The position numbers and the translations under genes are program-made. A stretch of 64,000 nt of DNA, taken from the NCBI GenBank assembly GCA_965235115.1, contig OZ249451.1:1736001-1800000 (forward strand), written 5' to 3'. Below the pieces are notes generated by a model. That model was given only the letters and a program-made list of their open reading frames with translations. It was not told where the DNA came from and searched no databases. Below, in pieces: positions 40,220-64,000 of this stretch; position 1 is the first letter of the stretch; every line of letters starts with the position of its first letter. This DNA comes from Laetmonice hystrix. Its lineage: Eukaryota.

Positions 40220-40306
40220 CCTCATTTGTTGCTTCATGAAAGCAGATTGAAGAGATAGTACCCAAACCGGTTAAGCAGGGCCGAGGAAAGCTTTACCTGA
40301 CTGGTG

Positions 40307-40426: not shown

Positions 40427-41089
40427 GCGCCAGCAATGACAGTTGAACTGTCTCAATGTGAACGTTTCTTGTAAAGCTCCTAAAGTACGACTAATTATTG
40501 AATGCCACCCAAGTCACACCTGTACGGGTGAAAATGAGTCAGAGGCTTTATTATAAAACAAATATTACATGTTTTTTATGGAGGTGTGATTTTATGTTTA
40601 GATCCTGTACTGGAATACTGGTGTAGGAAACCTTTTTACATCCTGTAAGAGGAAATGGTCATGTTGACAGTTATCTGACGGGTTGTAACAGATTAACAGG
40701 ATTTAAGTGCCTTTATACCTGCCTACCAAACACATAAACACTGCAGGATTCCGTACACCAAACACCCCAACTCCTCATGACCTACACTGACCCTGTGGGC
40801 ATGCAGTATGAGGACGTTGGTCCCCACCACTCACTCAGTAAGGCAGGGTTGTCAGACGTCTGATGCTCGTGCACAGTGGGGATAGAGCCGAAACAAATCA
40901 AACTCCCACTCATACACAACTCCTTTGATTCCAGCTCACAGTACGGCGGCACGCGTTTCGACGCACGTTACCCAGCGTGACGCAGGCCTTGTCTGCTTTA
41001 TCTGTCCGGCTGACAACGCTTAGGGCAGTTGTCCAGACAAGGCCCTAGAGCAATTCGTGCGCAACTTTACAAGAGCGAGCCTTATCTCA

Positions 41090-41832: not shown

Positions 41833-41961
41833 CGCGGGTGCAACCTCCAGGCCCATCAAACATGGGACCTCCGCGGTCATCACGTGACCCTAAAAGGATG
41901 TCTCAACTTTTTCTTATTCTTGTGGTTTTCACCACGCTCTTCGGAACGGTTGTAACGCAAA
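41833..41961 (+). CDS. First coding exon: partial 5' UTR + signal peptide [21 protein letters not shown] (ATG at 41898)
   Basis: Acceptor tttcattttgtcAG at 41831-41832, a hydrophobic 21-codon N-terminus, and a strong phase-1 donor a|GTGAGT at 41962 that joins in frame to the vWA1 exon. Confidence 0.8.
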
Positions 41962-44900: not shown

Positions 44901-47900
44901 ATTGATATCTGAATAATTGGTTCTTCTAGCAATATACTTTAATATTTAAATTAATAATATCGCATGACCATCAGATAATGCTCTTGAAGATGTTTCCTAT
45001 GAACATACTGTAAATCTGTTAGTATTTGGCCCCCACGATAAGCTAACATTTAACTTTCGATGAATTACATATTAAGATATGCTCCATCATTGGTGATAAC
45101 ATCATAAATGTTATATTCACGTGTTTGTAGTCGTAACAATATGATATGGATGTTTTCTTTCCGAAATGTACGTGTACATTAACTTAATGCATTGACTCTA
45201 GTCGGTCCACCCGGACCAACCGGAGCCACGGGATCCCCGGGCCGACCGGGAGCTCAAGGACCGGCCGGACGACCCGGCACAGCTGGACCGAGAGGACCTG
45301 CTGGACCCGACGGACAGCCTGGCCGCCCAGGCACACCAGGTAAACAATATCTGTTTGACACAATGGTAACCTTTGTCATCTTTACCATTTTATTATCGCA
45401 TTAAATAATTTGCATTAAAGTTATTTTTATTTATTGACTGTAATTGATATAATAGTTAATTGGAGACGTTTTGGTTGGTTACAGGCTCACCCGGCACACC
45501 AGGCCGATCAGGAGCCACAGGTCAATCGGGTCGTGTTGGACCGCGAGGACCTGGGGGACCTCTAGGACCTGGGGGACCCCGAGGACCAGCTGGACCTTCT
45601 GGTCCTGCAGGACCTTTGGGCGGTGCTGGCCCGAGAGGTCCAGCCGGACCCCGTGGGCCTGATGGAACACGGGGAGAATCAGGCCTTCCTGGGCCATCTG
45701 GACCCGCAGGACCTCCTGGAAGGAGAGGCAATCGCGGAGAACCTGGAGTTGGCGGAGGTCCTGGAAGTACAGGAGCAACTGGCTTCCCCGGACGGCCGGG
45801 CGGCCCTGGACAGCGGGGATCACCGGGACCACAGGGCCCCGCCGGGGAATCCGGACCACCCGGGCCTCTTGGGCCTGGTGGACCTCTGGGTCCTGCTGGA
45901 GCCACTGGCCCGTCAGGACCTGCCGGACCAGCTGGACGTCCTGGACCACGAGGCGGGCTTGGCCCCGCTGGACGACAAGGAGCGAGGGGAGAGTCTGGTC
46001 CAGATGGAGGGGCTGGCCCTCCAGGACCAGCCGGACCTCGAGGACCAGCCGGACCTCTTGGAGGTGCTGGAAGAACAGGTGCAGCAGGACCTTCAGGTCC
46101 CCGCGGACAAGCAGGACCCTCTGGACCGGCTGGACCAGCCGGTCCGGCAGGACCAGCCGGAAGACAAGGAGGGACAGGAGGACCCGGAGCTCGTGGCCCA
46201 CGAGGTGAATCAGGATTACCTGGACCTGCTGGTTCACCCGGCCCTGCAGGAAGCCGTGGACAACCAGGGCCATCAGGACCACTCGGTCCATCAGGACTAC
46301 CTGGACCATCAGGACCTTCAGGACCCGCAGGACCGCCAGGGCCACTGGGGCCCGCTGGCCCGTCAGGCTCAACCGGAGCCCTTGGTGGACCTGGCCCACG
46401 TGGACAACCTGGACCAGGAGGGCCACTTGGACCTGCAGGAATAACCGGTTCTGCTGGACCGCGGGGACAGCCGGGACCACCGGGACCGTCTGGACCTTTA
46501 GGACCGTCAGGTATGCATCTCTTTCTCCCTGTCTCACTCTCTCCCATTTATCTCTCACACTTGTGGCTTTCAGCTTTTTTTTTATCTAAGACTGTCGTTA
46601 ATGATAAACCCTATAATTTGTTGCACAGGACCTGCTGGACCCTCTGGACCAGCTGGTGAACGAGGCGGGGCTGGTCCACCTGGACCGTCTGGACCATCTG
46701 GACCAGCTGGGGGCCCTGGATCAAGAGGAGAACGTGGACCATTGGGACCAGCAGGAAGGGCTGGACCTCCTGGACCAGCAGGCAAGTAACGTTCAATAAC
46801 TATTTATATTTATTCTTCAATAACAGGATACATGTTTAATGAAAGCATGTGTTTATATTTTTTATCTTATATCTTATCTTATCTTATCTTTTATCTCCCC
46901 CAATTACGTCCACTATGAGTAGGAACTCTATAAACTAGGAGACTCTCCCTATGTTTGTCATAGGCTTTGTTAGCTCATTATGACAAACTCGTTGCTGTTA
47001 CAGGAGAGCGCGGTGAGGGTGGACCGGCCGGGCCCTCTGGACCATCTGGACCTGCTGGGCCTGGTGGGGAACGAGGACCGGCTGGGCCTTCAGGACCATT
47101 AGGTCCAGCAGGACGACCTGGTCCATCAGGTCCATCTGGACCGGCAGGTGAAACTGGAGCCGGTGGCCCCCCTGGTCCATCAGGACCGCGTGGACCTCAA
47201 GGAGGACGGGGAGAGTCTGGACCACCTGGACCTGTCGGACCATCTGGACCTGCAGGGGAACGAGGCTCAACAGGAGGCCCTGGACCAGCTGGACCATCAG
47301 GACCGTTAGGACCCGCTGGGCCGAGGGGAGGAACCGGCTCCCCAGGCCCACGAGGAGAACGAGGAGAGGGCGGAGAAGCTGGACCAGCAGGACCAGCTGG
47401 ACCACGTGGATCACCAGGTTCACGTGGCGAGGTTGGACCTTCTGGATTGCCCGGACCACAAGGTATGTCACTGGTTTGTGATCTTATAGATCTTGTGATC
47501 ACTGATTATCTTCCTTTTGGATACTATGTTGGTATCATTTAGAAAATAATAGATTAGACACACTAACTGAAAACTGTCCCCGTCTTATACCTTCAGGAAC
47601 CCGAGGCGAGCCTGGCCCTGCCGGACCAGGTGGACCACGTGGTCCCGCTGGCGAACGTGGCCAGCCTGGTGAATCTGGACCTGCAGGACCGTCAGGCCCT
47701 GCTGGACCATCAGGACAGCGTGGTCAGCCCGGTCCAGCCGGGGCTGTAGGCCCTGCTGGTCCCGTCGGATCGGCCGGACCTGCCGGAGCTACCGGAGGTC
47801 CTGGAGCCAGAGGAGAAGCTGGCGTTGCAGGACCTGTCGGACCTGCCGGACCACGGGGAACCCGGGGAGAAGGTGGCCCTGCTGGACCAGCTGGTGAATC

Positions 47901-50900
47901 TGGACCCGCAGGACCTGCCGGACCGAGAGGTCCCGCTGGCGGAAGAGGCGGGCCCGGACCAGCTGGACCTCAAGGCTCAAGAGGAGAGAGAGGAGAGGCA
48001 GGGCCCGCAGGCCCAGCAGGACCATTGGGACCTGCCGGTGAGAAGCCATTTCATGAATAATTCAGAATTCGTCTCTCAATACAACTTGTAGTAATGAGTA
48101 AGATGACAATACACGTTGACATAATTCAGATACTAATTGTTATTAAATGTGGTATTACTTTTATACAGGACCATCCGGACCTGCTGGACCAGGGGGGGAA
48201 CGAGGTCAGCCTGGTCCCGCAGGACCACTTGGACCATCAGGACCAGCTGGGACAACTGGAAGCCTTGGCCCAGCCGGCCCAAGAGGAGGCCCAGGCCCAA
48301 GTGGACCCCAAGGATCTGCTGGAGCCACTGGCGAGCCTGGACCATCTGGACCACGAGGACAGCCTGGACCATCTGGACCCTCTGGTCCATCTGGACCAGC
48401 AGGACCTGCTGGTGAACGAGGACCTTCTGGGTTACCTGGACCTGCCGGATCAACCGGTGGCCCCGGACCAGCCGGTCCAACCGGTGCTGTAGGCAGAGCC
48501 GGAGATAGAGGACAACCTGGACCTGCTGGACCACAAGGCAAGGACGTTTGTCTCTGGAGTTGATAATAATCTAATGAACAAATAACATTACCATTATTGT
48601 TACAACTCTAACCAGAGCAGCGATTCTTATATCTTTTACCATGTACTAATATCCATTGCCATATTAAGCAATGCAATTTTGTATCTTTTGAACAGGATCG
48701 GCAGGTCCAGCCGGACCTTTGGGAGGTGTTGGCCCATCTGGGCCGCGTGGATCGCCTGGTCCACGTGGATCCGCTGGACCATCAGGACCTGCTGGACCGG
48801 CAGGAGAGCGTGGGGCACCTGGACCGGCTGGTTCGACTGGCGGTCCCGGTGGACCCGGACCCGCTGGACCGGCAGGAGAACGTGGTCCACAAGGAAGCCG
48901 TGGTGTCCCTGGTGGTCCTGGATCACGGGGTGAAGCTGGACCAGCAGGACCGAGAGGAGAGTCAGGGCCAGCAGGGCCAAGCGGACCAAGCGGCCCAAGA
49001 GGCGAGGCTGGCGAGTCCGGACCTGCGGGACCTGCAGGATCACGAGGTGGGCATGTGCAAGACACATCTATTACTCAACACTGTTAACAATGTTCAGTAT
49101 TCAACAGCTTAATTTATAAGACATAGGAAACTGCTCGAATGTTATTGTTACGAAGCTATAGCATCTGACTATGGTTTCCAGGAGCACCTGGCCCTGGAGG
49201 ACAGAGAGGTCAACCAGGTGCACGAGGTGAGCCTGGTCCAGCCGGACCACAAGGTGAACGTGGTGGTGCAGGACCAGCTGGACCGAGAGGAACACCCGGC
49301 ACCGCTGGGCCAGCTGGCCGAACAGGAGCAGCTGGACCATTGGGACCTGCAGGACCTGCAGGGCCCCGTGGACAACGTGGTGAAGGTGGAACAGCGGGAG
49401 AACAAGGTTGGTATTGTAAACATTTTCATGATTTGCACAGTCTTTAAGTCTCTCCTTCATCATAATCTGGAATTGTGGGATTTTTTATTTAATTTTTATT
49501 TTAAAACTTTTGATCAATACCCACTTTACTTTCAGGCCAGCCTGGACCTGCTGGACCAAGAGGACAACGTGGTGAAAGCGGCCCTGCAGGAAGCCCAGGA
49601 CCAGCTGGACCCGCAGGTCAGCGAGGAGAGGCTGGACCTGCAGGCCGTGCAGGTCCCCAAGGATCTGCGGGAACTCCCGGCAGTCAGGGACCAACTGGCG
49701 CATCTGGAGCAGCTGGTCCTGCTGGACCAAGAGGCCAGCCAGGTCCGGCGGGACCTCTTGGACCCTCTGGACCGGCAGGAGGAGCAGGACCTCGTGGTGA
49801 AAGGGGAGAACCTGGACCAAGTGGCCAACCCGGTTCAGCAGGCCCTGCCGGTAAGTTCTGCCTTCTTTGATTTGTTACTTGTTTCCTGGCGCTGTTTGTA
49901 TTGACCATCAAGTTAATGTTGTTATTTCCATCTGAAAGGGCCTGTTGGACCCGGAGGACCTCGTGGAGAGCGTGGCGAAGGAGGATCTCCTGGACCTGCT
50001 GGACCTGCTGGACCCTCAGGTCCAGCTGGACAGCCAGGGACCAGAGGAGAAGCTGGACCTGCTGGACCGGCAGGACCCCGCGGGGGTGTCGGTGAGGCAG
50101 GACCTGCTGGACCAGGTGGAAGCCGAGGTGAACGAGGACCTGCAGGACCGCCAGGACCTGCTGGACCAGCAGGACCGCGATCTGAAAGAGGAGAGGCCGG
50201 ACCTCCCGGTCCATCTGGGCCAGCCGGACCATCAGGACCAGCAGGACCTGCAGGACCTCAGGGAGAGCAAGGAACACGAGGCGAAGCAGGAAGGCCTGGA
50301 CCACAAGGTATGTTCCACTCCTGCCAGGGAAAGTGATGGAGGATGACTGTGAGCACATCATCTTCATTATTCTTACACTGAAATGGTAAATAATTACTCA
50401 TTATGTCGACTATGTGGATTTTAATAGTGAACATCACTTACACCATTGTTTTCATCGCTTTTAGGCGGCCCTGGACCTTCCGGTCCCCTAGGACCAGCAG
50501 GAAGACCAGGACCATCTGGCCCCGCTGGACCTCGTGGACAACCAGGAGAATCAGGACCAGCTGGAAACCGTGGAGAGCCTGGACCCGCAGGACCATCTGG
50601 ACCCTCAGGACCAGCTGGACCAGCCGGCCCGACTGGAGCTGCTGGCCCAGCTGGATCACGTGGTCAGCGTGGAGAGGGAGGACCGCAAGGATCCCCTGGA
50701 TCACCAGGATCACGTGGAGAGCGAGGACCTGCTGGACCTGCTGGACCGAGTGGACCCTCTGGACCAGCTGGACCAGCTGGATCTGCGGGAGAACAAGGTC
50801 CTCGTGGTGAAAGTGGACTTCCTGGCCCCGCTGGTAGTGTAGGACCTGCTGGACCCCTTGGCCCCGCAGGACCTGCTGGACCTTCAGGACCTGGAGGCCC

Positions 50901-53900
50901 CCGTGGAAACCGTGGAGAACAAGGACCTGCAGGAGAACGTGGACAACCTGGACCTGCTGGGCCCAGTGGGCCAAGAGGACAGCCTGGTCCTGCTGGCCCT
51001 TCGGGACCAGCTGGAGAAGCAGGATCACGAGGGGAATCTGGACTTCCTGGTCCATCAGGTACATTGTCCGGTCACTCCTGACATTCGAGTAGTGATTTAA
51101 TCTATGATACGAGGAAATTAAAGTATTAATGACAATTAATGATGCCTGGTTGATTAGTTAATTGATAATTAATAGTATCTATTATTATTAATAGGACCGG
51201 CTGGAGGTCCTGGTCCAGCTGGAAACCGCGGAGAAGCCGGACCACCTGGCCCTAGTGGACAACGTGGAGAGAGAGGCCCACGCGGAGAAGCTGGGAATGC
51301 TGGTTCCCCTGGCCGTGACGGCCAACCCGGAGCAGCTGGACCAACCGGAGCGGCAGGCCCATCTGGACCTGCAGGACCCGGTGGTCCTAGAGGCGAACCA
51401 GGAGCACCTGGACCTGCTGGACCTGGAGGACCCCGTGGAGAGCGGGGAGGTCCAGGACCTGCAGGGCCCGCTGGTGAAGCCGGCCCTGCAGGACCTGGGG
51501 GGCCACGAGGACAACGTGGTGAACCAGGAAGACAAGGAACAAGAGGTAAACGTGGTAACATTTAGGCCCTATTCCGTCATGCATCTCAATAATACGACAA
51601 GAAACTGGTATCCCCAGTTTTATTAATTAACTACATCAGTATATTAGTAAAGGCATAATGTATAAATTTCAGAGCATCTGGTACATCATTAGCAATAATT
51701 GTCACCAAGCAATCCGGCAAAAGATAATAATGCTTAATCACTCTTCTCACTATAGGTGAAGCTGGCCCAGCCGGACCTCAGGGTGGCCGGGGAGAACTTG
51801 GCCCTGCTGGACCTGGTGGACCACGTGGAGAAGCAGGCCCCGCTGGACCAGCAGGACCTGCTGGTGAACGTGGACAGCAAGGATCAGCTGGATCCCCAGG
51901 ACCTCAGGGTCCCTCTGGCTCACCTGGTACAAGAGGTGAACAAGGAGAACGAGGACCTGCCGGACCTCTAGGACAACCAGGTCAGTGTACCTCCTTCTAC
52001 GGCATACACACAATTTCTAAACTGAAGACTTGTGGCATATCTTAAATCTAGTATAATAATATAATATATAATATAATAGATTTTTAAAAAACGGTCCAGA
52101 TTCTACATTCAGACTCAAGCATCCTGATGTAAAGGGATTATTTTTTAAATTCGATTAAAATTTAATATTTTATATTCTAGGCCCCAGCGGACCTGCTGGT
52201 TCCCCTGGCCAGAGGGGAGAAGCTGGACCTGCTGGACCTGCAGGACAACGTGGAGGCCCTGGTCCCAGAGGAGAAGCAGGTACACCTGGCGGTCCCGGTG
52301 AACGTGGTGAAGCTGGACCTGCTGGCCCAGCCGGTCGCGCTGGCCCATCAGGACCGGCAGGCCCAGCTGGAGAGAGAGGCGAGGCAGGACCATCTGGATC
52401 CCCTGGATCACCAGGACCAAGAGGAGAGGCAGGAGGCCCAGGACCCGCAGGCCAGCCTGGTGAAGCCGGCCCTGCAGGACCTGCGGGGCAACGAGGACAA
52501 CGTGGTGAAGCAGGGCAACCTGGTTCAGCTGGTAGGTTTATAAGTATTGATGAAAAAACACTTTCAAAATTATTCCTGTACTGAAGTATTCTCTTAATTT
52601 ATATTGATGGAGACATTGGAACTCTTTCTGAGAAAGATATTATTCGTTTATTTCAGGTGGTATTGGACCAGCGGGACCTGCAGGACAACGCGGGGAGGCT
52701 GGACCTGCCGGACGACCCGGTGGCAGAGGTGAGGCTGGCCCTGCCGGACCTGCCGGATCACCAGGTGAACGGGGACGACCAGGACCATCTGGCCCCGCTG
52801 GACCAAGTGGTCCTGCTGGGCCTGCAGGAACACGAGGAGAACAGGGAACGAGAGGAGAATCTGGATCCGCAGGACAGCCAGGTCCTTCTGGACCAGCTGG
52901 ACCCCGTGGAGAAAGAGGGGAAGCTGGACCTGCTGGTCCTGCCGGCCAACGCGGAACGCCAGGATCAAGAGGCGAACCTGGCAGTCCAGGTCCCGGCGGT
53001 AATAGAGGAGAAGCCGGACCGTCTGGACCGGCTGGACCAAGTGGCCCAGCTGGACCAGCCGGACCAGCTGGCCAGCCCGGAGAACAAGGACCCCGTGGAA
53101 CTCCTGGATCTGCTGGAACTCAGGGACGTCCCGGTGAGCGTGGTGAGGCAGGACCTTCCGGACCTGCCGGACCTTCAGGACCCTCAGGACCACGCGGAAC
53201 ACGTGGAGAGCCTGGTCAAGCTGGAGCAGCAGGTATGAGTCTTAATGCATGTCAAATGTAATGTCAAATGTAATGTCAAATGTAATGTCAAATGTAATGT
53301 CAAATGATTCGGGCAGAAGATTCCCCCTTTTAGAAAATGAGTAAAACATTATTACTCTATGAAATATAAACTTATTATAGGTGCAACTGGACCTGCTGGA
53401 CCTGCCGGACAACGAGGAGAATCTGGACCAGCTGGACCAGCTGGACAGCGGGGAGAAGCCGGCCCTGCAGGCCCTGGTGGACCACGTGGTGAGGTAGGAC
53501 CCCAGGGTTCAATTGGATCGCCTGGACCCAGTGGCCAACCCGGCCCTGCAGGCCCACGGGGAGAAGCTGGACCAAGGGGAGAGCAAGGCCAACCTGGTAC
53601 CCCAGGTATGTGATCTTTATGTGATTTATATATTCTTAAACCTACCCCTGTGTTTGAGTTTTAATTTAAATTTAAGTTCTCAAAGGATGATTCCTCACAC
53701 TCGTTTACTCACTTTGTTTTCAGGAAGTACTGGTATTTCTGGACCTGCTGGGCCGCGGGGAGAACCCGGCTCTGCAGGTCCCGCAGGCCCCGCAGGCCCA
53801 CGCGGTGAGCCAGGCCCACCTTCAACCAGAGGGGAACGGGGAGAGCAAGGACCAGCTGGTCCAGCGGGATCTCCAGGACCCGCCGGTCCAGCCGGAGGAC

Positions 53901-56900
53901 CAGGACCAAGAGGTGAAGCTGGAATTCGTGGCGGAAGAGGTGAAGCCGGAGCACCTGGGCCCCGTGGAGAGGTTGGTCCAAGTGGACCGGCCGGACCTGC
54001 TGGTACATCAGGACCATCTGGCCCAGCCGGACCAAGAGGAGAACCTGGAGAGCGAGGACAAGCCGGACTTCCAGGACCCGGAGGTATGTATCATTGAAGG
54101 TTTAATCATAGACAACTTGATGTTTAGTGGATTGTACAAGAGATTTGGTATAACATGGGATGTTCTCCATTCAGGTCCAAGTGGTCCACAAGGTCCTCAG
54201 GGAAGCCGAGGAGAACCGGGTCCGGCTGGAGGACCCGGTCCGCGAGGAGAACGTGGTGGGCGTGGAGAGGCAGGACCTGCTGGTGAACCAGGAAGAGCTG
54301 GTGAACGTGGTTCCCCCGGCCCTGCTGGACCAGCTGGTGCGTCAGGGCCCTCAGGTCAGCGTGGACAGCCGGGAGAAAGAGGCGAACAAGGACCAAGAGG
54401 AGAGGGTGGAAGCCCAGGATCACCAGGTGATGATAGAATATAAACTACTGATGATTATTCAAACCTTAATCTGTCAGCATGTTTACATTGTCTTCAGTAG
54501 TTTTCACAGAAACGTCGTTATTCTTGTAGGATCTGATGGCAGACCAGGTGGTCCGGGACCTCGTGGAGAGGTTGGACCGGCAGGTGAACCAGGGTCTGCT
54601 GGACCTGCAGGACCAAGCGGACCAAGTGGACCTGGTGGTCCACGAGGTGAACCAGGCAGCCGTGGAGAACGTGGCGAGGCCGGACCTGCAGGACCATCAG
54701 GACCTGGAGGACCCAGAGGAGAAGCTGGCCCAGCTGGGCCAAGAGGAGAAGCGGGACCTTCAGGACCATCAGGTATGTTGACCCGGAATCCTTTCGTCCT
54801 GTTTTCATTCAAAGAAATCATAAGGGGAATGACATCTGGGGGGGGGGGGGGGGGGGGGTGTTCCTCATCATGTCGTTAGCTTGTCGTATCGTTAACTCCA
54901 ATGAATTTTCAATGGGGATTTTAACGCACGACAAGATAACGACAGATGAGGAACGCACCCCAGCTGAGTCAGTGCCGTATTTCTTTTACCGAATTATTAT
55001 TTGATACAATAATTATGTCTAACGTATAGCAAAGAATAAAATACTTAACACAATATGACCTTTTCCATGTTTATTTTTAAGGACCGTCTGGACCTGCTGG
55101 ACCTGCGGGACAACCTGGAGAGGCTGGACCAGCAGGACCAGCTGGATCACGTGGCGAGCCTGGACCAAGAGGAGAGGCCGGAACTCCAGGATCAGCTGGA
55201 AACCGTGGTGAGCCTGGTGCCCCAGGACCTTCGGGACAACCTGGATCTGCCGGGTCCCCTGGAACACGGGGAGAGCGTGGCCCTGCAGGCGAACGTGGAG
55301 GTCAAGGAGAACGTGGAGAAGCTGGACCGGCAGGAACACCAGGTAGGCAAGAATAGAATCGAATGGAAGTGACATATAGACTACGCATAATCAGTATGAC
55401 ATATGAGTTCATGTGCCTAACGAGAGGTCCCCCTTTTCAATTATTTTCTTTGATGCCTGATTTGTTTTCGGGCAAAAGGCATGTCTTAAAACTTCCACCT
55501 GCAACATAATATTTTTTTTCAAATATGCGTTGCTATTTTTTTCTAACAGGTTCAGCTGGACCTGCTGGACCTGCTGGACCACGAGGTGAGACAGGCCAGC
55601 CAGGAGCAGCCGGACCATCTGGACAGCCAGGCCCTGCAGGACCTGGTGGGCCAAGAGGAGAAGCTGGACCTGCAGGAGAATCAGGACCGGCAGGCCCTGC
55701 CGGACCGGCTGGACGTCCAGGCGAGCGAGGTCAACCAGGTCCCGCTGGCGCGAGTGGCGTTCCAGGAGAGGCTGGGGCCAGAGGTCTTCGTGGTGAACAA
55801 GGTGCACGAGGAGAAGCCGGCACACCTGGATCAGCAGGTAGGACACTTTCGACATTGGATAGCCATCCCCCTAAGGCGTCAGGAAAATTCTGCTTAGATG
55901 TAAGAGTAAATGTTCCCACACTTTCCCATATTCGTGATTATGCTAAAGTAGAAAATCTTTGTAATATATATTTTGTGGGGTTTTTCATCAGGTCAACCTG
56001 GACCTGCTGGAGAGGCTGGACCGGCTGGACCATCTGGACCCCAAGGACCTGCAGGACAACGAGGAGAAGGTGGACCCAGAGGAGAAGCTGGACCTGCCGG
56101 CAGTCCCGGATCTCGAGGAGAACCGGGATCACCTGGTCCATCTGGACCTTCTGGTCCAGCTGGACCTCAAGGTGGTCGTGGAGAAAGAGGACCTGGAGGA
56201 TCCGCTGGTCCTCGGGGTGAGGCTGGAACTCCAGGTTCACGTGGTGAGCCTGGACAACGTGGTGAACAAGGCCCTGCTGGAACACCAGGTCGCCCTGGTG
56301 AAAGAGGTCAACCTGGCTCTGCTGGCTCTGCTGGACCAGCTGGACCTGCAGGACCCCGAGGAGAACGAGGAGAAGCTGGACCACAAGGTCCAGCAGGATC
56401 TCCTGGTCAAGCTGGGGAACCAGGCCGACCAGGTAAAATATGTTAATGGTTGCAGTGTTTTTGTTGTTGTCGAGGAACATATATGCTGATTGCTAGGTTT
56501 ATGTACCTTCAAAGGGCAAGTAGTGAACCATAACTTAACCACACAATTCTCATGAAGTTTCATTTATACGAATACAAAAACCTCTGACACGGCTCATAAT
56601 CCTTCTAATACAGGCGAAGCTGGACCGGCTGGTGCTCCGGGAGTAGGCCGTCCAGGCCCCGCTGGCCCTGCTGGAGCCATTGGGGAAGCTGGACCTGCAG
56701 GTGCACCAGGACCCGCTGGACAGAGAGGACAGAGAGGAGAAGGAGGCACACCTGGATCCCCTGGCCCAAGAGGTGAAGCTGGAAGTGCAGGACCTCAAGG
56801 ACCACAAGGAGCCCGTGGAGAGGCAGGAAGCGCTGGCCCTGCTGGCGAAGCTGGACCGTCTGGCCAAGCTGGTCCTGCAGGACCACAAGGAGCACCGGGC

Positions 56901-59900
56901 CAAAGAGGCGAAGGTGGCCCGAGAGGAGAGGCTGGACCAAGAGGAGAAGATGGCACACCAGGCAGTGCTGGTAGGCCAGGAGAGCGTGGACAGCCTGGGC
57001 CAGCCGGACCGCAAGGAGAGGCCGGACGTCCTGGACCAGCTGGACCAGCTGGAACCCGTGGAGAACGTGGACCAAGAGGAGAGGCAGGAACAGCAGGAAA
57101 TGCTGGCTCTCCTGGATCACCAGGTAAGCAGTGATTACGTATAATTGATTGATCTCATCTCTGACTGATTTAAACAAGAACATCAATTAGAACATTTGGA
57201 TGATACATTAAAATACAAATGTTTTGTAATACAGGGCGCGATGGATCCCCTGGTGCCGCTGGTGAACCTGGAAGAGATGGCAGCGCAGGCGCTCCCGGTG
57301 CGCGAGGAGAAGCTGGACCCCGTGGTGAGCCCGGCACAGCTGGTACACCAGGCACAGCCGGAGAACGTGGACAGCCTGGACCATCTGGACCAGCAGGATC
57401 TCCTGGATCTCAAGGTCCAAGAGGCGAGGCAGGGTCACCAGGTCCACAGGGAAGCCGTGGAGAGGCAGGTCCTCAGGGATCACGCGGCGAGGCTGGACCC
57501 AGAGGAGAATCTGGTACTCCAGGAACACCCGGTCAACGAGGCGAACGGGGAGAAGCAGGTACACCAGGCTCAGCAGGATCTCCTGGACCAAGTGGTCCAG
57601 CTGGACCTAGAGGAGAACCTGGTGCGGCAGGAACTCCAGGTGAACGTGGCGAGGCAGGAACTCCAGGGTCACCTGGTAAGTATAAGTATGCAGGCAGTGA
57701 CTTTGGGTCGAGTAATGTCATAAATAATAATCGATTAGTAAATCCAACATGGGAGGGACGAACTTCTAAATTTCGGCATTAATGATTTCAGGAAGAGATG
57801 GTTCACCTGGTGCGCCTGGACCACGTGGCGAAGCCGGAACGGCCGGAACACCTGGAACACGTGGAGAAGCTGGTCCAGCTGGACCAGCAGGGGCACGTGG
57901 AGAAGCTGGCCCAAGAGGCGAAGCAGGAGAAGCAGGCCGTCCCGGAGAACGGGGTGAGGCAGGGACACCAGGATCTGCTGGTGCACCTGGACCACGTGGT
58001 GAAGCCGGAACACCAGGATCACAAGGATCACCTGGTTCACCTGGACCTGCAGGACCAAGTGGACCTCGTGGTCAACCAGGATCCAGGGGTGAAGGTGGCC
58101 CAAGAGGAGAGGCTGGCCCGAGAGGTGAGGCCGGAACACCGGGATCGGCTGGTCGACCAGGAGGGCGTGGAGAAAGAGGACCAGCAGGTCCTGCGGGAGA
58201 AGCTGGCAGTCCAGGACCAGCGGGATCACAAGGGGCACGTGGAGAAAGTGGACCTCGTGGCGAGGCAGGAAGTCCTGGAGCACCTGGGTCAGATGGAAGG
58301 CCAGGTATGTGTGGTCTATAATACATCTATAAGACTTTCATTATGAAAAAAGGATTGTTAAAAAAAGTTTACAAAGCCGCTTACAAAGTGCACAAATCAG
58401 TAACAAAATGATATATAAGAAAGGTATTAAATATTAAGATAAAATAAATTTCTGTTAAAAGGCGAAGCAGGACCTGCTGGGCCCGCTGGCGCTCTTGGAC
58501 CAGCTGGACCTGCTGGCCCACGAGGAGCACGTGGTGAGGCTGGCCCTCGGGGAGAGCCTGGTACACCAGGTGCACCTTCACAGCGAGGGGAACAAGGAGA
58601 ACAAGGACCTGCTGGACCTTCTGGACCTGCTGGATCCCCAGGACCTCGTGGTGAGCGGGGCCCTGCTGGAGAACGTGGTGCTCCAGGAGAGAATGGCCGA
58701 CCAGGAACTCCTGGCCAGCGTGGAGAGGTAGGACCCTCTGGACCTGCTGGATCCGCTGGACCATCAGGACCTGCTGGACCGCAAGGTGGTAGGGGTGAAG
58801 CTGGACCTCGCGGAGAGCCAGGCCAACGTGGAGAACCAGGCACAGCTGGAACACCAGGTTATAGACCCTTTTGTATTTAAAAGTAAAATAGAAAATCAGC
58901 TGAGAACAAATTTATTGCTTAAAACTTTATGGAATGATATAACTTTAATGATATAATGATATTTAATTATGTATTTCTATCAAACAGGATCGGCTGGACC
59001 TGCTGGACCTCGTGGGGAACGAGGAGAGGCTGGACCAGCTGGATCAGCTGGACCTTCTGGCCCAGCAGGAAGACCAGGATCAGCTGGAACACGTGGTGAA
59101 CAGGGTCCTCGTGGAGAAGCTGGAACACCTGGATCACCTGGTCAGCGAGGAGAAGCTGGACCCGCTGGACGTGATGGCTCACCTGGAGCACGTGGAGAAG
59201 CAGGACCAGCTGGTACCCCTGGTAGGGCAGGAGAGGCTGGCCCAGCTGGACCACAGGGAGCACGGGGAGAAGGAGGACCGCGTGGCGAGTCTGGGCCAAG
59301 AGGAGAGGCAGGAACTCCAGGAACAGCTGGACGACCTGGACCAGCAGGGCGAGCAGGATCACGAGGAGAACAAGGACCTCAGGGAACCCGAGGGGAACCT
59401 GGAAGAGATGGTTCACCAGGTGGACCTGGTGCACGTGGAGAAGCTGGCCCACGAGGTGAAGCTGGAACTCCTGGAAGTGCAGGAAGTCCCGGAACACCAG
59501 GTATGTAGCGTTTTATACGAATGACAAATCAATTATCCTTATTTTCTTTTTAACATGAAGTTTTATTTGGTAAAATTCAGTGAAAGTTTTTTTTACTGAC
59601 TTTCAAAATATCTGACAGTTATGAATTCGTGTTATAGGCGAAGCTGGACAACCTGGATCGCCAGGACAACGTGGAGAGGCTGGCCCTGCTGGATCACCTG
59701 GCACGCGTGGAGAAGCAGGACCACGTGGAGAGGCTGGTACTCCTGGAACGGCAGGAACACCCGGAGAAAGAGGTAGTGCTGGACCTTCTGGACCTGCTGG
59801 ACCTAGCGGGCCTGCAGGTACACGTGGTGAGGCTGGTCCAAGAGGCGAGCAGGGTCCGCGTGGAGAGGCAGGAACACCAGGACAGAGAGGAGAACCCGGA

Positions 59901-62900
59901 GCTCGGGGAGAATCTGGACCTGCAGGAACTGCAGGAAGACCAGGGGAACGAGGTCAACCAGGTTCAGCTGGATCTGCTGGTCCAGCTGGACCAGCTGGAC
60001 CACAGGGCACACGAGGTGAAGCTGGAACTCCCGGAACACCAGGACAGAGAGGAGAAGCTGGCCCGCAAGGAAGTGCTGGTATGTTATTGAGGATTATATA
60101 TGATACCTTACACATAAACATGGCAGAAAGAAAATTACTGATCATTCATATCATATTTGGATTAAAAGTAATATATTTTGCTTGTTGACAGGCCCAGCAG
60201 GTCAACCTGGATCCGCTGGACAGCGTGGAGAACGTGGCGAACCTGGTGAGGCAGGACGCCCCGGAACCCCAGGAGGTCGAGGAGAAGCAGGACCTGCAGG
60301 AGCTGCAGGATCCCCAGGCACACAAGGACCCAGAGGTGAACGTGGTGAACCAGGAACGGATGGTTCTCCCGGATCACCTGGCTCCAGAGGAGAAGCTGGC
60401 CCTCAAGGACAGGCTGGCTCCCCTGGCTCTGATGGGCAACCAGGTCCCCAAGGACAACGCGGAGAACCTGGTCAAAGAGGAGAGCCCGGAGCACGTGGTG
60501 AATCAGGCACTCCAGGGACTGCTGGATCGCCAGGAAGAGATGGTATAGTTATATAGTTATATATTAGTTATGAACACATTTGCAGATTGTTATCGAATGT
60601 AACGTTGTCGCCTTTGACATCGTTATGAATTTCTGTTTTATAGTAGGAAAATTAATTCAAATTAACCAAATTAAATGGGTTATCAGGATCACCTGGCCAA
60701 CAAGGATCTCCTGGTACGCGAGGAGAAGCAGGACCTCAAGGCCCACAAGGTCAACGTGGAGAACCTGGAGAGCGAGGAGAGGCTGGAACTCCTGGACAGG
60801 CAGGTCGTCCTGGAGCACGTGGTGAGGCAGGACCCTCCGGATCTCCTGGATCAGCAGGACCATCAGGTCCAGCTGGATCTCGGGGTCTACCTGGAGAACG
60901 TGGAGAGCCTGGAACGAGAGGAGAGGCAGGACCTCGTGGCGAGGCTGGTAAGAAGTCAGATTTTAATTTAAAATATGGCAGGATCACAATTATTTTACCA
61001 GCAATTTGTATTCTTAGCTTTTTATGACCGTGCCATTCTTGTAATTTAAAAAATCACTTCAAAACATTCTCACCCCCAAAAATGTTTTCAGGTACCGCTG
61101 GCTCCCCTGGCCCTGCTGGCCAGAGAGGAGAACCTGGTACACAGGGTTCTGCTGGACAGAGGGGAGAAGCTGGACCTGCGGGTCAAGCTGGTCCAGCAGG
61201 CCCACAAGGTCAAAGAGGTGAAGCCGGGCCACGTGGAGAGGCTGGAACCCCAGGTTCAGCAGGACAACCTGGACCAAGGGGAGAGGCTGGAACCCCAGGA
61301 TCAGATGGTCAACCTGGTCCAAGTGGGCCAGCTGGACCACAGGGCCAACGAGGAGAACCAGGTACACGAGGTGAGCCTGGTGCCAGAGGAGAACCAGGAA
61401 CCCCAGGAAGTGCAGGAACTCCAGGATCAAGAGGAGAAAGAGGACCAGCAGGACCCTCTGGACAAGCAGGATCTGCAGGCCCTGCTGGTGCAGCTGGACC
61501 TCGTGGAGAACCTGGCAGTGATGGAGCACCAGGACGTGATGGCTCTCCAGGTAACTTTAATTTTGGTTATTATGATCTAATGTGGTAAAGACATTGTAAT
61601 CTATGCTGTTCTGAACATTGGAAGCGCATTGATATTTTGCTTAAAATGCTGTCTATATCTTTTAAAGGAGCACCTGGTCCTTCTGGGCCAGCTGGACAAC
61701 GTGGAGAAGCTGGATCTCCGGGAACACAAGGACCCCGAGGTGAGGCAGGCCCCCGTGGTGAAGCTGGAACTCCTGGATCTGCTGGTCAACCTGGAAGTAG
61801 AGGATTGCCTGGAGAACGTGGTCAGGCAGGTACACCTGGATCTGCTGGACCAGCTGGATCAGCTGGACCTCGTGGACAACGTGGAGAGCCAGGTACCAGA
61901 GGTGAACCAGGGGCAAGGGGAGAACCAGGCAGTCCAGGAACTGCTGGTTCTCCAGGCCCCAGAGGAGAGGCAGGAACTGCAGGATCCCCTGGTGCTGATG
62001 GCCAACCAGGAAGCCCGGGAGGAAGAGGTGAAGCAGGACCAAGAGGCGAAGCAGGACCACGTGGAGAGGCTGGCAGTCCAGGTGGAGCTGGGCCTGCAGG
62101 ACCCGCTGGATCACCAGGCCAGCGTGGTGAGGCAGGACCTCAAGGAGCCCCAGGAAGTGCAGGGCAACCAGGCTCACAGGGACCGAGAGGAGAGTCAGGC
62201 CCTGCTGGACCTGGAGGTGCGAGAGGTGAACCAGGCCAGAGAGGAGAAGCAGGGACACCTGGATCTGCAGGTCGACCTGGAGAGAGAGGACAGGCTGGAT
62301 CACCTGGACCTGCAGGACAGGCTGGTTCACCCGGAACCCGAGGAGAGGCAGGCCCACGAGGTGAGCAAGGACCACGTGGGGAGGCAGGAACACCTGGATC
62401 CCAAGGAACGCCTGGCCAAAGGGGAGAGGCAGGACCTGCAGGACAATCTGGTCCTGCAGGACCATCTGGCGCTCCTGGGCCAAGGGGAGAAGCAGGTGCT
62501 CCTGGAGCACCTGGCCGTGGAGAACAAGGTCCACGTGGAGAAGCTGGAACACCTGGTACTCCAGGTAGACAGGGCGAAAGAGGAGCCGCCGGACCTGCTG
62601 GTCCATCAGGACCACAAGGACCACAAGGTGGACGTGGTGAACCTGGTCAGCGAGGAGAAGCTGGACCAAGGGGAGAAGCAGGATCACCTGGTGGTGCTGG
62701 TAAGTTGAAATGAATATTCTCCACGCTTTTTATGATTTTCTTTACTCGTAATTCGATTAAAATAAACGATACTTCTAAATTCTGTATAATTTTTTTATTT
62801 TATTTATGACCACCATTTCTTGATGAAAAGTCATATAAATAATGTGGCATGAATGTGTAGGTCCGGCCGGCCCTCAGGGTCCACAAGGACAACGAGGAAC

Positions 62901-64000
62901 ACCGGGCACTGACGGACAGCCAGGCTCAGATGGTCAGCCAGGATCACCTGGCGCACGAGGTGAACCTGGTGCAGCTGGAACACCAGGCGCCCGTGGAGAG
63001 CCAGGTCAGCGCGGCGAAGCAGGAACTCCAGGACAGGCTGGAAGGCCAGGAGAACGAGGAGAAGCTGGTCCACAGGGTGCAGCTGGTTCAGCAGGCCCAT
63101 CTGGCCCTGCCGGATCCCCTGGACAACGGGGTGAAGCTGGACCACGCGGAGAGCCCGGATCAGCTGGTGCACCTGGTAAGATTTGGAAAATTAACAGTTC
63201 ATGTCTTAGCTGAAAATAATTTAGGGACTCGATTGGTTCTGTTCAGACAATACAAGATTTTGTTTTACTGTCGTGAAGCTTATACATTAAACTTTTGACT
63301 GGGGTTTCCTGTTTCTTGTTTAATGTAAATAATTTTGTGAATGTGTTTCATTTTCAGGTCGCGATGGTCAGCCTGGAGCTGCTGGCCCACGTGGTGAGCC
63401 AGGAACAGATGGACAAGCAGGAAGTAGAGGAGAAGCAGGACCACGAGGTGAGGCAGGACCACAAGGGTCTCCTGGTCAACGTGGTGAAGCCGGTGCACCT
63501 GGATCACCTGGAAGCCGTGGAGAACCAGGCACTCCTGGATCAGATGGCTCCGCTGGACCAGCTGGACCAGCCGGTACTCGTGGAGAACCCGGACAACGTG
63601 GTGAAGCTGGACAACGTGGTGAACCTGGTGAGGCAGGTCGTCCTGGTACTGATGGCCGTCCGGGTGAGCGTGGCGAGGCTGGGCCTGCAGGTTCAGCTGG
63701 TCCAGCTGGACCCCGTGGAGAGGCTGGCCCAGCTGGAGCGCGAGGAGAGCCTGGTCAAGCAGGCGAAGCTGGATCTCCTGGACGAGATGGTAAGAAGCAG
63801 TCTTGTTTTCAATTTTACTTAATTGGAAGAATCATTATATTTCCTACTGATACGATTAAACCCTTTGCTGATCATAACAAATATTGCTTGAAAAGGATCA
63901 CCTGGAGCGCAAGGCCCCGCAGGACCACGAGGAGAACCTGGACTTGCTGGGCCCGCTGGTGCTGTAGGACCATCTGGACCTCGTGGCGAAGCTGGCACAG
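41898..64000 (+). CDS. Giant secreted collagen (signal peptide + 2 vWA domains + at least ~1,530 Gly-X-Y triplets), 3' end beyond window; candidate annelid-type cuticle collagen
   Basis: Manual splice model: join(41898-41961,42482-43069,44284-44859,45202-45339,45485-46510,46629-46781,47004-47462,47597-48037,48169-48537,48696-49046,49182-49406,49536-49850,49939-50307,50465-51058,51195-51545,51756-51980,52181-52531,52657-53232,53381-53605,53724-54083,54175-54426,54530-54772,55082-55342,55550-55837,55992-56432,56614-57123,57235-57675,57792-58304,58462-58857,58988-59500,59638-60078,60192-60542,60687-60947,61092-61550,61668-62699,62861-63175,63358-63789,63896->64000). Every intron is phase 1 with an AG acceptor and a GT donor (two GC). 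The joined frame is stop-free (5,003 codons) and keeps Gly-X-Y register across all junctions. Confidence 0.95.
42482..43069 (+). CDS. Exon encoding vWA domain 1
   Basis: Translation [18 protein letters not shown]...ARIGVLQYG...NVAIIFTDG...IQLIVVDL...IINRICP shows the vWA strand motifs (D-L-x-h-h-h-D, R-I-G-V-L-Q-Y, h-h-h-TDG) and Cys at both ends. Acceptor cgcctAG, donor g|GTAAAT. Confidence 0.88.
44103..44245. promoter_or_regulatory. Intronic cluster: NRF1-type palindrome plus four inverted CCAAT boxes in a 29/30-bp repeat
   Basis: TGCGCATGCGCA at 44103-44114; ATTGG at 44152, 44182, 44211, 44241. Motif match only; function unproven. Confidence 0.35.
44284..44859 (+). CDS. Exon encoding vWA domain 2
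   Basis: Translation [17 protein letters not shown]...[14 protein letters not shown]...[14 protein letters not shown]...[15 protein letters not shown]...LIVVDL...LNAIAS...DVCTP matches the vWA pattern (IG-x3-V, AGL, R-x4-VAVVFT, L-x-x-IAS) with flanking Cys. Acceptor acattttcAG, donor g|GTAATA. Confidence 0.85.
45202..64000 (+). CDS. Collagen triple-helical region: 35 exons, 13,782 coding nt, about 4,590 residues, incomplete at window end
   Basis: Continuous Gly-X-Y from the Gly codon at 45204. All internal collagen exons are exact multiples of 9 nt except 56614-57123 and 61668-62699, each 3 nt short because of one Gly-X-Gly interruption. Introns are 88-309 nt and AT-rich. Confidence 0.95.
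53248..53306. repeat. 12-bp intronic repeat (aatgtcaaatgt), about 5 copies
   Basis: atgtcaaatgtaatgtcaaatgtaatgtcaaa... Confidence 0.85.

What the first reader, a model, noticed from the sequence alone, without database searches (positions are those of the whole stretch)
45204..64000. Helix alphabet lacks Lys, Cys, Met, His, Trp and Tyr, and Gly-Pro-Pro is rare
Seen: reading all 35 collagen exons I found no K, C, M, H, W or Y codon in frame and one Phe. Dominant triplets are [21 protein letters not shown] and GTP. Established: vertebrate collagens depend on Lys/Hyl for lysyl-oxidase cross-links and glycosylation and on Gly-Pro-Hyp for stability. Arg in Y and Glu in X are strongly stabilising in host-guest peptides. 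Earthworm cuticle collagen is known for Gly-Hyp-Ala and Gly-Hyp-Ser (Hyp in X). Inference: this helix is stabilised by Arg/Glu pairs, X-position hydroxylation and possibly Ser/Thr O-glycans, and cannot be cross-linked through helical lysines.
Basis: partly seen in the sequence, partly recalled or inferred. Interest (0 to 1): 0.72.

Follow-up and report, generated by a model that had tools for sequence, protein, structure and literature searches.

The report
Lysine-free giant worm collagen helix
This stretch is the first half of an expressed, 2.5-micrometre worm collagen whose rod lacks every chemically reactive or aromatic amino acid (no lysine, cysteine, histidine, tryptophan or tyrosine). 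That matches what is known of annelid cuticle collagens, so it gives sequence-level detail on a known oddity and is not a new kind of molecule.

Summary

- **Count in the window.** The 35 exons at 45204-64000 splice into 4,593 Gly-X-Y residues with no K, C, M, H, W or Y, one F, and 14 Gly-Pro-Pro triplets where about 132 are expected.
- **Gene model.** Spliced transcript contigs confirm 11 junctions. One of them removes the only in-frame Lys codon.
- **Whole gene.** The full helix (chain A) is 8,646 residues, about 2.47 µm, and has no K, C, H, W or Y. A neighbouring paralogue (chain B, 8,633 residues) and homologues from five other sources also have no K, C or H.
- **Controls.** The same genome's fibrillar collagen has 35 Lys per 1,000 residues and many Gly-Pro-Pro triplets. 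The non-helical parts of this gene use a normal alphabet. Codon bias and recent internal duplication do not explain the pattern, so selection most likely does.
- **Other features.** Glu is almost only at X and Arg mostly at Y. Arg-Gly-Glu occurs 3.2 times more often than expected. Gly-Pro-Pro sits in islands at matching positions at both ends of A and B, and beside chain A's Gly-to-Ser breaks.

Helical lysine cross-links are impossible and Arg/Glu pairing has statistical support. X-position hydroxylation and O-glycans cannot be tested here, and Y-position Pro is common. Giant annelid collagens and their unusual composition are already described, so this is a new member of a known kind.

The parts
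41898..42419 (+). Start codon, signal peptide and Cys-rich N-terminal region of the same gene. This is an open-frame range; the exon's 3' end was not mapped.
   Evidence: ORF list; Met at 41898 followed by a hydrophobic leader. Ordinary alphabet: K7 C11 M5 H5 Y7 F12 in 223 aa.
42466..43101 (+). First von Willebrand A domain (open-frame range).
   Evidence: Pfam PF00092, E = 9.4e-17. Contains K, C, M, W, Y and F.
44208..44876 (+). Second von Willebrand A domain (open-frame range).
   Evidence: Pfam PF00092, E = 1.7e-16. Contains K, C, M, H, W, Y and F.
45204..64000 (+). 35 triple-helix exons of chain A. The first is 45204-45339, the second 45485-46510, and the last, 63896-64228, runs past the window end. 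They give 4,593 aa with no K, C, M, H, W or Y.
   Evidence: Splice model and composition; full exon list; eleven junctions between 46510 and 52181 confirmed by spliced contigs of run X4.
45204..47227 (+). N-terminal Gly-Pro-Pro island: 10 of the window's 14 GPP triplets lie in the first 513 helix residues.
   Evidence: GPP positions. Chain B has 9 GPP in its first 200 triplets.
45784..45786 (+). The only Phe codon of the window's helix (helix residue 146).
46782..47003 (+). GC-AG intron.
   Evidence: The donor reads G|GCAAGT. A spliced contig joins 46781 to 47004 (the joint is listed as 46778/47001 with 4 ambiguous letters).
48538..48695 (+). Second GC-AG intron.
   Evidence: The donor reads G|GCAAGG. 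An X4 contig piece ends at 48535-48537 (table 8).
51546..51755 (+). Intron that holds the only in-frame Lys codon (AAA at 51548-51550) next to the helix.
   Evidence: Two candidate donors. The spliced contig uses 51545/51756.
50181..50189 (+). Gly-to-Ser interruption (Ser-Glu-Arg), flanked by GPP triplets 12 residues before and 4 after.
53822..53830 (+). Gly-to-Ser interruption (Ser-Thr-Arg), directly preceded by a GPP triplet.
56643..56654 (+). Gly-X-Gly interruption (one residue missing). Chain B has an interruption at the same helix position.
58578..58586 (+). Gly-to-Ser interruption (Ser-Gln-Arg). Chain B is also interrupted at this helix position.
62516..62527 (+). Gly-X-Gly interruption. 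Chain B has an interruption at the same helix position.

Best explanation
**What it is.** The stretch encodes the N-terminal 53% of the triple helix of chain A of a two-chain giant collagen. The full helix is 8,646 residues, about 2.47 µm. The protein has a signal peptide, two VWA domains, the helix, a short neck, a membrane helix and a cytoplasmic tail. It is most likely the annelid-type cuticle collagen.

**Restricted alphabet (shown).** The helix is built almost entirely from G, P, A, R, E, Q, S and T, with a little D, L, V, N and I. Purifying selection has kept out every side chain that is nucleophilic, oxidisable or aromatic: Lys, Cys, His, Tyr and Trp completely, Met and Phe almost completely.

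**What follows (inferred).** The rod cannot form lysyl-oxidase, disulfide, dityrosine or histidine-based cross-links. It also has few hydrophobic patches. It should therefore behave as a chemically inert, non-covalently packed, unbanded fibre.

**How the helix is stabilised (inferred).**
1. One proline in about half of the triplets, at X or at Y but hardly ever both. Pro at Y is the standard prolyl 4-hydroxylase substrate. Pro at X before Ala or Ser is the context hydroxylated in earthworm cuticle collagen.
2. Arg at Y.
3. A very frequent Arg(Y)-Gly-Glu(X) junction, which takes the place of the Lys-Gly-Glu/Asp clamps of other collagens.

Gly-Pro-Pro is reserved for an N-terminal and a membrane-proximal C-terminal island, and for the flanks of Gly-to-Ser breaks. 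These look like clamps or nucleation zones.
For: **Composition and gene model.**
- Window composition. Splicing and expression.
- Whole chain A: 59 exons, an 8,646-aa helix with K = C = H = W = Y = 0, M = 1, F = 2.
- Chain B: 8,633 aa with K = C = H = W = Y = 0, M = 1, F = 14. Four of its interruptions fall at the same helix positions as in A.

**Evidence for selection.**
- A and B share only 31% identity at non-Gly positions, which is 3,963 differences. None of them involves K, H, C, W or Y.
- In chain A, 1,701 codons are one base from Lys, 1,850 from His and 1,863 from Cys.
- Third codon positions are AT-rich (GC3 = 0.22), so base composition does not disfavour Lys codons.
- There is no recent internal amplification: the best long self-matches in the coding sequence are 61-65% identical.

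**Controls.**
- The fibrillar collagen of the same genome has 35 Lys, 13 Met and 5 Phe per 1,000 residues, and 35 GPP in 385 triplets.
- The non-helical parts of gene A use a normal alphabet.

**Homologues.** Helices from five other sources (384, 1,065, 1,068, 3,333 and 1,398 aa) all have K = C = H = 0.

**Charge pattern.** Arg-Gly-Glu is enriched 3.2-fold in A, where it makes 17.9% of junctions and takes 77% of all Glu. It is enriched 2.2- to 3.1-fold in three A-like homologues. Across the aligned chains, R(Y) in B with E(X+1) in A is 2.0-fold enriched.

**Gly-Pro-Pro.** The profile per 200 triplets is almost the same in A and B. Three of chain A's five interior GPP lie within 12 residues of a Gly-to-Ser break.

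**Literature.**
- Annelid cuticle collagens have a very long helix and globular domains (review PMC11766948).
- Giant annelid collagens of 7,719-8,859 aa have similar Pro shares at X and Y (PMC12403961).
- Earthworm cuticle collagen has unusually high 4Hyp at X (PMC8233474).
- Earthworm cuticle fibrils lack striations (abstract of PMC2106309).
Against: - Tissue and protein identity are not shown. No run is annotated as RNA, and the tissue of run X4 is unknown.
- The organism's name is coded. 'Worm' rests on earlier notes of this scan and on the fit to published annelid collagens.
- No post-translational modification can be read from DNA.
- Chain B shows almost no within-chain Arg-Gly-Glu enrichment (1.17-fold), so that motif is not universal. 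From memory, Arg-Glu pairs stabilise model peptides less than Lys-Glu pairs.
- The GPP depletion is milder in some homologue fragments (94 against 138 expected in L036).
- The C-terminal membrane anchor is not part of the classical picture of a secreted cuticle collagen.
- The classical amino-acid analyses could not be read here.
Confidence: 0.6

Rival explanations
1. Lys is excluded because an 8,600-residue helix folds very slowly, not in order to avoid extracellular cross-links. Unfolded chains would stay exposed to lysyl hydroxylase and the Hyl glycosyltransferases for a long time. Any Lys would then be over-modified, as happens in slow-folding mutant procollagens, so Lys was purged and Arg took over the basic role.
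For: - The helix is extremely long.
- A C-terminal GPP island next to the membrane anchor fits C-to-N zipper folding.
- Arg is abundant where other collagens use Lys.
- From memory of host-guest data, Lys at X is not destabilising, so a non-stability reason is needed.
Against: - It does not explain why Cys, His, Tyr, Trp and Met are missing as well.
- Lysyl hydroxylase was not looked for in this genome.
- There are no folding-rate data.
Confidence: 0.15
2. The gene pair is not the cuticle collagen but another giant, membrane-tethered surface or matrix collagen. The composition is as described, but the link to the classical cuticle protein is wrong.
For: - Both chains end in a transmembrane helix and a conserved cytoplasmic tail. 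This is not reported for cuticle collagen.
- According to earlier notes of this scan, the same genome has another giant, Thr-rich collagen that resembles the Riftia cuticle collagen (not tested here).
Against: - Length (2.47 µm), two distinct co-linear chains, a terminal globular region and Pro-Ala/Pro-Ser triplets all match descriptions of annelid cuticle collagens (partly from memory).
- Giant collagens of this size are reported from alvinellids and an earthworm in the context of the cuticle.
Confidence: 0.2
3. The restricted alphabet is a species-specific adaptation to a harsh chemical habitat (sulfide, metals, oxidants), not a family-wide property.
For: The missing residues (Cys, His, Met, Lys, Tyr, Trp) are the metal-binding and oxidant-sensitive ones.
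Against: - Homologues from five other sources, including two metatranscriptome samples and another species' genome, also have K = C = H = 0.
- Paralogue B, only 31% identical at X/Y positions, shares the trait, so it predates the A/B split.
Confidence: 0.08
4. The missing residues are a passive by-product of amplifying a short founder repeat that happened to lack them, or of codon bias, without selection.
For: Collagen genes grow by exon duplication. Weak self-similarity is detectable within the gene.
Against: - Self-matches are only 61-65% identical over kilobases.
- GC3 is 0.22, so AAA/AAG codons are not disfavoured.
- Thousands of codons lie one step from Lys, His or Cys. Asn, reachable from only 288 codons, occurs 15 times.
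- A and B differ at 3,963 positions without a single K, H, C, W or Y.
Confidence: 0.03

Closest known systems
Annelid cuticle collagens (Nereis A and B chains; Alvinella, Paralvinella and Arenicola 2.5-µm molecules; Lumbricus cuticle collagen with Gly-Hyp-Ala and Gly-Hyp-Ser)
   Same: - Very long triple helix (computed here as 2.47 µm).
- Two distinct chains.
- A globular region at one end (two VWA domains).
- Pro at X before Ala or Ser in the N-terminal third.
- Few or no cross-linkable residues, and unbanded fibres.

Sources: review PMC11766948; reference titles; PMC8233474; abstract of PMC2106309. Lengths and compositions are partly from my memory of Gaill et al. 1991/1995 and Kimura and Tanzer 1977, which are not held here.
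   Different: - This is a gene-level view. The exclusion of K, C, H, W and Y over 17,279 residues in two chains is complete, not merely 'low'.
- The protein has a C-terminal membrane anchor.
- Arg-Gly-Glu junctions are enriched, and Gly-Pro-Pro sits in positioned islands.
- Hydroxylation and glycosylation are unknown for this protein.
Giant annelid collagens listed with the Alvinella pompejana genome (BMC Biol 2025, PMC12403961: A. pompejana 8,859 aa; Paralvinella 8,689, 8,413 and 7,719 aa; Eisenia andrei)
   Same: - Same size class.
- Comparable Pro shares at X and Y: 0.33-0.40 and 0.22-0.33 in that paper, against 0.28 and 0.24 for whole chain A and 0.39 and 0.22 for the window part.
   Different: - In what I read of that paper, the collagen passages and Table 1 deal only with length and proline position. 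A word search found 'lysine' only in the opsin methods. It does not mention the missing residues, the charge pattern, the GPP islands or the two-chain arrangement.
Riftia pachyptila cuticle collagen (glycosylated Thr at Y; Mann et al. 1996, cited)
   Same: An annelid cuticle collagen that does not rely on Gly-Pro-Hyp.
   Different: - In chain A, Thr is mostly at X (204 against 45 at Y), typically as Gly-Thr-Pro.
- Y positions are filled by Ala, Arg, Pro and Gln.
- The helix is 2.5 µm, not 1.5 µm.
Lys-Gly-Glu / Lys-Gly-Asp 'folding code' of collagens and collagen-like proteins (Nat Commun 2025, PMC11923368)
   Same: A charged Y-Gly-X junction is strongly over-represented (3.2-fold; 17.9% of junctions in chain A). 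That is the kind of signal the paper reads as interchain electrostatic clamps.
   Different: - There is no Lys at all; the basic partner is Arg.
- Interruptions are flanked by Gly-Pro-Pro, not by Lys-Gly-Glu/Asp.
- Whether Arg-Gly-Glu clamps comparably is untested.
Fibrillar collagens (the same genome's COLFI-bearing gene at C21:11.72-11.73 Mb)
   Same: A Gly-X-Y triple helix with Glu preferring X and Arg preferring Y.
   Different: - The fibrillar gene has phase-0 exons of 54, 99 and 108 bp.
- It has 35 Lys, 13 Met and 5 Phe per 1,000 residues.
- GPP is at or above expectation (35 against 26).
- It ends in a C-propeptide.

Membership tests
Annelid cuticle collagen | Triple helix far longer than in fibrillar collagens (about 1.5-2.5 µm). 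| tested here: met
   The helix is 8,646 residues; at 0.286 nm per residue that is 2.47 µm. It has only 6 internal interruptions.
Annelid cuticle collagen | Two distinct alpha chains (the A and B chains of Nereis). | tested here: met
   Two tail-to-tail paralogues of 8,646 and 8,633 helix residues, with interruptions at the same positions (2683/2684, 3198/3199, 4251/4252, 5189/5190). Co-assembly is inferred, not shown.
Annelid cuticle collagen | A globular domain at one end of the rod. | tested here: met
   Two VWA domains and a Cys-rich region lie N-terminal of the helix.
Annelid cuticle collagen | Unusual composition: hydroxyproline also at X (Gly-Hyp-Ala/Ser), and little or no Lys or Hyl. 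| tested here: inconclusive
   The encoded part fits: GPA 271 and GPS 102 in the window, and zero Lys. Hydroxylation cannot be read from DNA. The published compositions were not readable here.
Annelid cuticle collagen | Made by the epidermis and located in the cuticle of an annelid. | not testable with these tools
   Spliced transcripts exist, but the tissue is unknown and the organism's name is coded. 'Marine worm' comes from earlier notes. The search for the erythrocruorin linker domain (PF16915) found nothing and had no positive control.
Fibrillar collagen | C-propeptide (COLFI), a helix of about 1,000 residues, and phase-0 exons based on 54 bp. | tested here: not met
   The gene ends in a neck, a membrane helix and a tail. 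Its introns are phase 1 and its exons are 136-1,161 bp. COLFI is found only at two other loci.
Nematode cuticle collagen | Short interrupted helices flanked by conserved Cys clusters, with Tyr-based cross-links (PMC11766948). | tested here: not met
   The helix has no Cys and no Tyr, and runs 8,646 residues almost without interruption.
Collagens following the Lys-Gly-Glu/Asp folding code | Over-represented KGE/KGD junctions. | tested here: not met
   There is no Lys. Arg-Gly-Glu is the over-represented junction instead.

The most novel reading that the evidence does not exclude
The rod is an evolved 'inert polymer' version of collagen. Every side chain that enzymes, oxidants, aldehydes or quinones could attack has been purged from about 17,000 helix positions in two chains. 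The universal Lys-based electrostatic folding clamps have been rewritten as Arg-Gly-Glu, partly complementary between chains A and B. Gly-Pro-Pro is used only as positioned clamps: an N-terminal island, a membrane-proximal nucleation island, and patches beside Gly-to-Ser breaks. If so, this is a natural design rule for making micrometre-long, register-safe triple helices without cross-links.
Probability: 0.3. Interest if true: 0.65.

Novelty: new member of a known kind. Interest (0 to 1): 0.5.

Why it matters
Annelid cuticle collagen has been a biochemical curiosity for sixty years, known mainly from amino-acid analyses and electron microscopy. This gene pair gives a complete sequence-level account of its helix.

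- The near-absence of reactive residues turns out to be total, conserved and selected.
- It provides a natural exception to the proposed Lys-Gly-Glu/Asp folding code.
- It suggests testable rules for building very long collagen rods that stay in register and need no covalent cross-links: one Pro per triplet, Arg at Y, Arg-Gly-Glu junctions, and Gly-Pro-Pro only at the ends and at defects. Such rules would be useful for collagen-mimetic materials.

It is not a new class of molecule, and its chemistry (Hyp position, glycans) remains to be measured.

Tried and rejected
- **RNA evidence.** The run search listed no run annotated as RNA. Laying the four runs showed that X4 holds spliced contigs, which I used for junctions only. 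Depth, strand and tissue cannot be read from contigs.
- **Classical papers.** Kimura and Tanzer 1977, Gaill et al. 1995 and Mann et al. 1996 are not held. Old J Cell Biol scans are held only as abstract plus references. The supplement of PMC8233474, with the earthworm composition, is not held. Published Lys values are therefore cited from memory only.
- **Homologue search.** The tail profile searched against 1.84 billion representative proteins returned only short single-exon ORFs, with no full-length proteins. Cluster look-ups gave no names beyond one 'hypothetical protein'. The contig of the closest relative (P0001) could not be delivered.
- **Taxon check.** The search for the erythrocruorin linker domain (PF16915) found nothing, but it had no positive control, so it says nothing.
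- **Prolyl 4-hydroxylases.** P4Ha_N matches at four or more loci on C1. This is a lower bound and shows no obvious expansion. I did not examine the catalytic domains for divergence.
- **Rejected explanations.** Codon or GC bias (GC3 = 0.22). Recent repeat amplification. Mis-modelled exons hiding Lys.
- **Not followed up.** I considered whether the N-terminal VWA domains might bind Gly-Glu-Arg sites through a metal site. By eye, the first VWA exon does not show the canonical Asp-x-Ser-x-Ser motif, so I did not pursue it.
- **Not attempted.** Structure or complex prediction, which is uninformative for Gly-X-Y rods of this size.

Full report
**1. Observation**

A six-frame scan shows Gly-X-Y runs only on the + strand from 45204 to the window end.

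The flanks show one rule throughout. Each exon ends on the first G of a Gly codon, followed by GT (twice by GC). The next exon starts two bases into the Gly codon, after AG. Exon lengths are multiples of 9 except where the helix is interrupted.

The spliced translation is 4,593 residues with K = C = M = H = W = Y = 0 and one Phe (45784-45786). Its 1,526 triplets are led by [27 protein letters not shown] and GQR. There are 14 Gly-Pro-Pro where 132 are expected from the X and Y proline shares.

One place could have hidden a Lys: two in-frame donors at 51545 and 51554. Contigs of run X4 are spliced, and they use 51545/51756. They also confirm ten other junctions, including a GC-AG intron. The gene is therefore expressed, and the model, including the Lys-free reading, holds where it could be tested.

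**2. The whole gene**

The window is G000:C21:1736001-1800000. I fetched 90 kb downstream and extended the model.
- Chain A has 59 exons from 45204.
- Its helix is 8,646 residues (2.47 µm at 0.286 nm per residue) with six internal interruptions.
- A last exon encodes a short neck, one membrane helix and a cytoplasmic tail.
- Upstream lie a signal peptide and two VWA domains.

Over the full helix K = C = H = W = Y = 0, M = 1 and F = 2.

A second gene lies tail-to-tail on the minus strand (chain B). Its helix is 8,633 residues with K = C = H = W = Y = 0, M = 1 and F = 14. Four of its interruptions are at the same helix positions as in A. The two chains are therefore co-linear and probably co-assemble. 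Only these two genes in the genome carry this tail.

**3. Is it more than chance or bias?**

- *Control collagen.* The fibrillar collagen of the same genome was found through its C-propeptide. It has classical phase-0 exons, 35 Lys, 13 Met and 5 Phe per 1,000 residues, and 35 GPP in 385 triplets against 26 expected. At that Lys frequency, chain A would carry about 299 Lys.
- *Same gene, other domains.* The non-helical parts of gene A use K, C, M, H, W, Y and F normally.
- *Codon bias.* Third codon positions in the helix are AT-rich (GC3 = 0.22). In chain A, 1,701 codons are one base from Lys, 1,850 from His and 1,863 from Cys. Asn is reachable from only 288 codons, yet occurs 15 times.
- *Divergence.* A and B are 31% identical at non-Gly positions. 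None of their 3,963 differences involves K, H, C, W or Y.
- *Repeats.* Self-comparison of the coding sequence gives only 61-65% identity over long matches, so there has been no recent amplification of a founder unit.
- *Homologues.* A profile of the two tails found 50 representative proteins, all short ORFs. Contigs behind five of them carry helices of 384, 1,065, 1,068, 3,333 and 1,398 residues. All have K = C = H = 0 and at most one or two each of W and Y.

The exclusion is therefore helix-specific, old, shared across the homologues sampled, and maintained by selection.

**4. Further anatomy**

*Charged residues.* Glu is at X 664 times and at Y twice. Arg is at Y 676 times and at X 107 times. 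Asp is almost only at Y. The junction Arg(Y)-Gly-Glu(X) occurs 513 times against 160 expected locally. It makes up 17.9% of all junctions and takes 77% of all Glu. The enrichment is 2.2- to 3.1-fold in three A-like homologues but only 1.17-fold in chain B, which favours Gly-Glu-Arg triplets instead. Across the aligned chains, Arg(Y) in B with Glu(X+1) in A is enriched 2.0-fold, and the reverse 1.6-fold. Part of this reflects shared ancestry.

*Proline.* Proline is split between positions: 49% of triplets have exactly one Pro and 1.2% have two. GSP, GTP and GPS are over-represented.

*Gly-Pro-Pro.* GPP is depleted about five-fold even against local expectation (34 against 172). What remains is positioned. 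Counts per 200 triplets are 10, 0, 3, 1, 0, 0, 0, 0, 1, 0, 0, 0, 0, 17, 2 in A and 9, 0, 3, 1, 0, 0, 0, 0, 0, 0, 0, 0, 1, 12, 3 in B. Three of chain A's five interior GPP lie within 12 residues of its Gly-to-Ser breaks, and chain B has a GPP opposite one of them.

*Hydrophobic residues.* L, I, V, M, F, W and Y together are only 12 per 1,000 in A.

**5. How it most likely works**

Shown:
- the encoded alphabet and its conservation;
- the charge and proline patterns;
- the two co-linear chains;
- expression.

Inferred:
- With no Lys/Hyl, Cys, Tyr or His, the helix cannot take part in lysyl-oxidase, disulfide, dityrosine or His-based cross-links. The genome nonetheless has a lysyl oxidase.
- With few hydrophobic residues, the helix lacks the patches that drive banded fibril packing. 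This fits the unbanded earthworm cuticle fibrils (abstract) and, from memory, the easy extraction of native annelid cuticle collagen.
- Stability should come from Y-position Pro (ordinary hydroxylation substrate), X-position Pro (hydroxylated in earthworm cuticle collagen), Arg at Y, and Arg-Gly-Glu junctions.

From my memory of the Persikov-Brodsky host-guest scale, the residues used here are among the better ones at their positions, and W, F, Y, H and C are the worst. Lys at X and Met or Ile at Y are favourable, however, so stability alone does not explain their absence. Chemical inertness, or avoidance of over-modification during very slow folding, is needed as well.

The C-terminal GPP island beside the membrane anchor looks like a nucleation zone for C-to-N zipper folding. 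The near-absence of GPP elsewhere would discourage out-of-register nucleation in a long repetitive chain. This last step is a hypothesis.

**6. Comparison with what is known**

- Annelid cuticle collagens are described as having very long helices, globular domains and odd compositions (review).
- Nereis and earthworm cuticle collagen papers exist, but I could read only their titles.
- The Alvinella genome paper lists giant annelid collagens of 7,719-8,859 aa with X and Y proline shares like those found here. It discusses only proline.
- A 2025 paper proposes Lys-Gly-Glu/Asp junctions as a general collagen folding code. This helix is a Lys-free exception that uses Arg-Gly-Glu.
- The features defining fibrillar collagens and nematode cuticle collagens are not met.

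**7. Earlier notes of this scan**

Other readers had already noted the following on this locus:
- the VWA-VWA-collagen architecture;
- the N-to-C composition gradient;
- the Gly-to-Ser breaks;
- the shared interruptions;
- the membrane anchor.

My analysis re-derived each of these independently. They also report a Thr-rich giant collagen elsewhere in the genome, which I did not test.

**8. Verdict**

The molecule belongs to a known kind, the giant annelid cuticle-type collagen. The sequence-level rules (total exclusion of reactive residues, Arg-Gly-Glu junctions, positioned GPP islands) appear undescribed in the literature I could read.

Noticed in passing
beyond the window: G000:C21:1816759-1817345 (chain A) and C21:1823794-1824141, minus strand (chain B): Both chains end in a neck, one membrane helix and a cytoplasmic tail with shared motifs (Ser-Asp-x-Glu-Ser, Arg-Ser-Ser-Val-Val-Asp). 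Chain A and many homologues end in Ser-Ser-Phe-Leu. Fifty representative homologues of this tail exist in public data, and only these two genes in this genome have it.
   Followed up: partly
chain A helix residues 1240, 2089, 2683, 3198, 4251 and 5189; chain B 2684, 3199, 4252 and 5190: Four of the six interruptions fall at the same helix position in both chains. The two that are A-specific (Gly-to-Ser) are flanked by Gly-Pro-Pro triplets, which are otherwise almost absent from the interior.
   Followed up: yes
window 46782-47003 and 48538-48695: Two GC-AG introns. The first is confirmed by a spliced contig.
   Followed up: yes
beyond the window: chain A intron between C21:1806889 and 1807115; chain B: Chain A has a single phase-0 intron among otherwise phase-1 introns. 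Chain B has four phase-0 introns and one apparent phase-2 intron in my model.
   Followed up: partly
G000:C1:30881577-30881987, minus strand: A match to the prolyl 4-hydroxylase alpha N-terminal domain lies in a 618-aa open frame without stops. This may be an intronless (retro-copied?) P4H alpha gene. Three more P4Ha_N loci lie on the same contig.
   Followed up: no
window 38240-38690 and 40230-40450: Short tandem repeats give repetitive open frames on both strands, just upstream of the collagen gene. One is a roughly 33-bp unit around 38.3-38.6 kb. The other is a 30-bp unit encoding Met-Ile-Thr-Gln-Phe-Thr-His-Tyr-Asp-Val, present three times.
   Followed up: no
run X4: A run listed with unknown kind, and not on record as RNA, holds spliced contigs of this gene. 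It is evidently a transcript library of the same sample.
   Followed up: yes
locus L036 (JGI sample 3300036281, 27.5-kb contig): A 27.5-kb contig whose held 11.2-kb end is a single open frame of 3,540 aa. It looks like a near-full-length transcript of an A-like giant collagen from another organism. Only this end could be fetched.
   Followed up: partly
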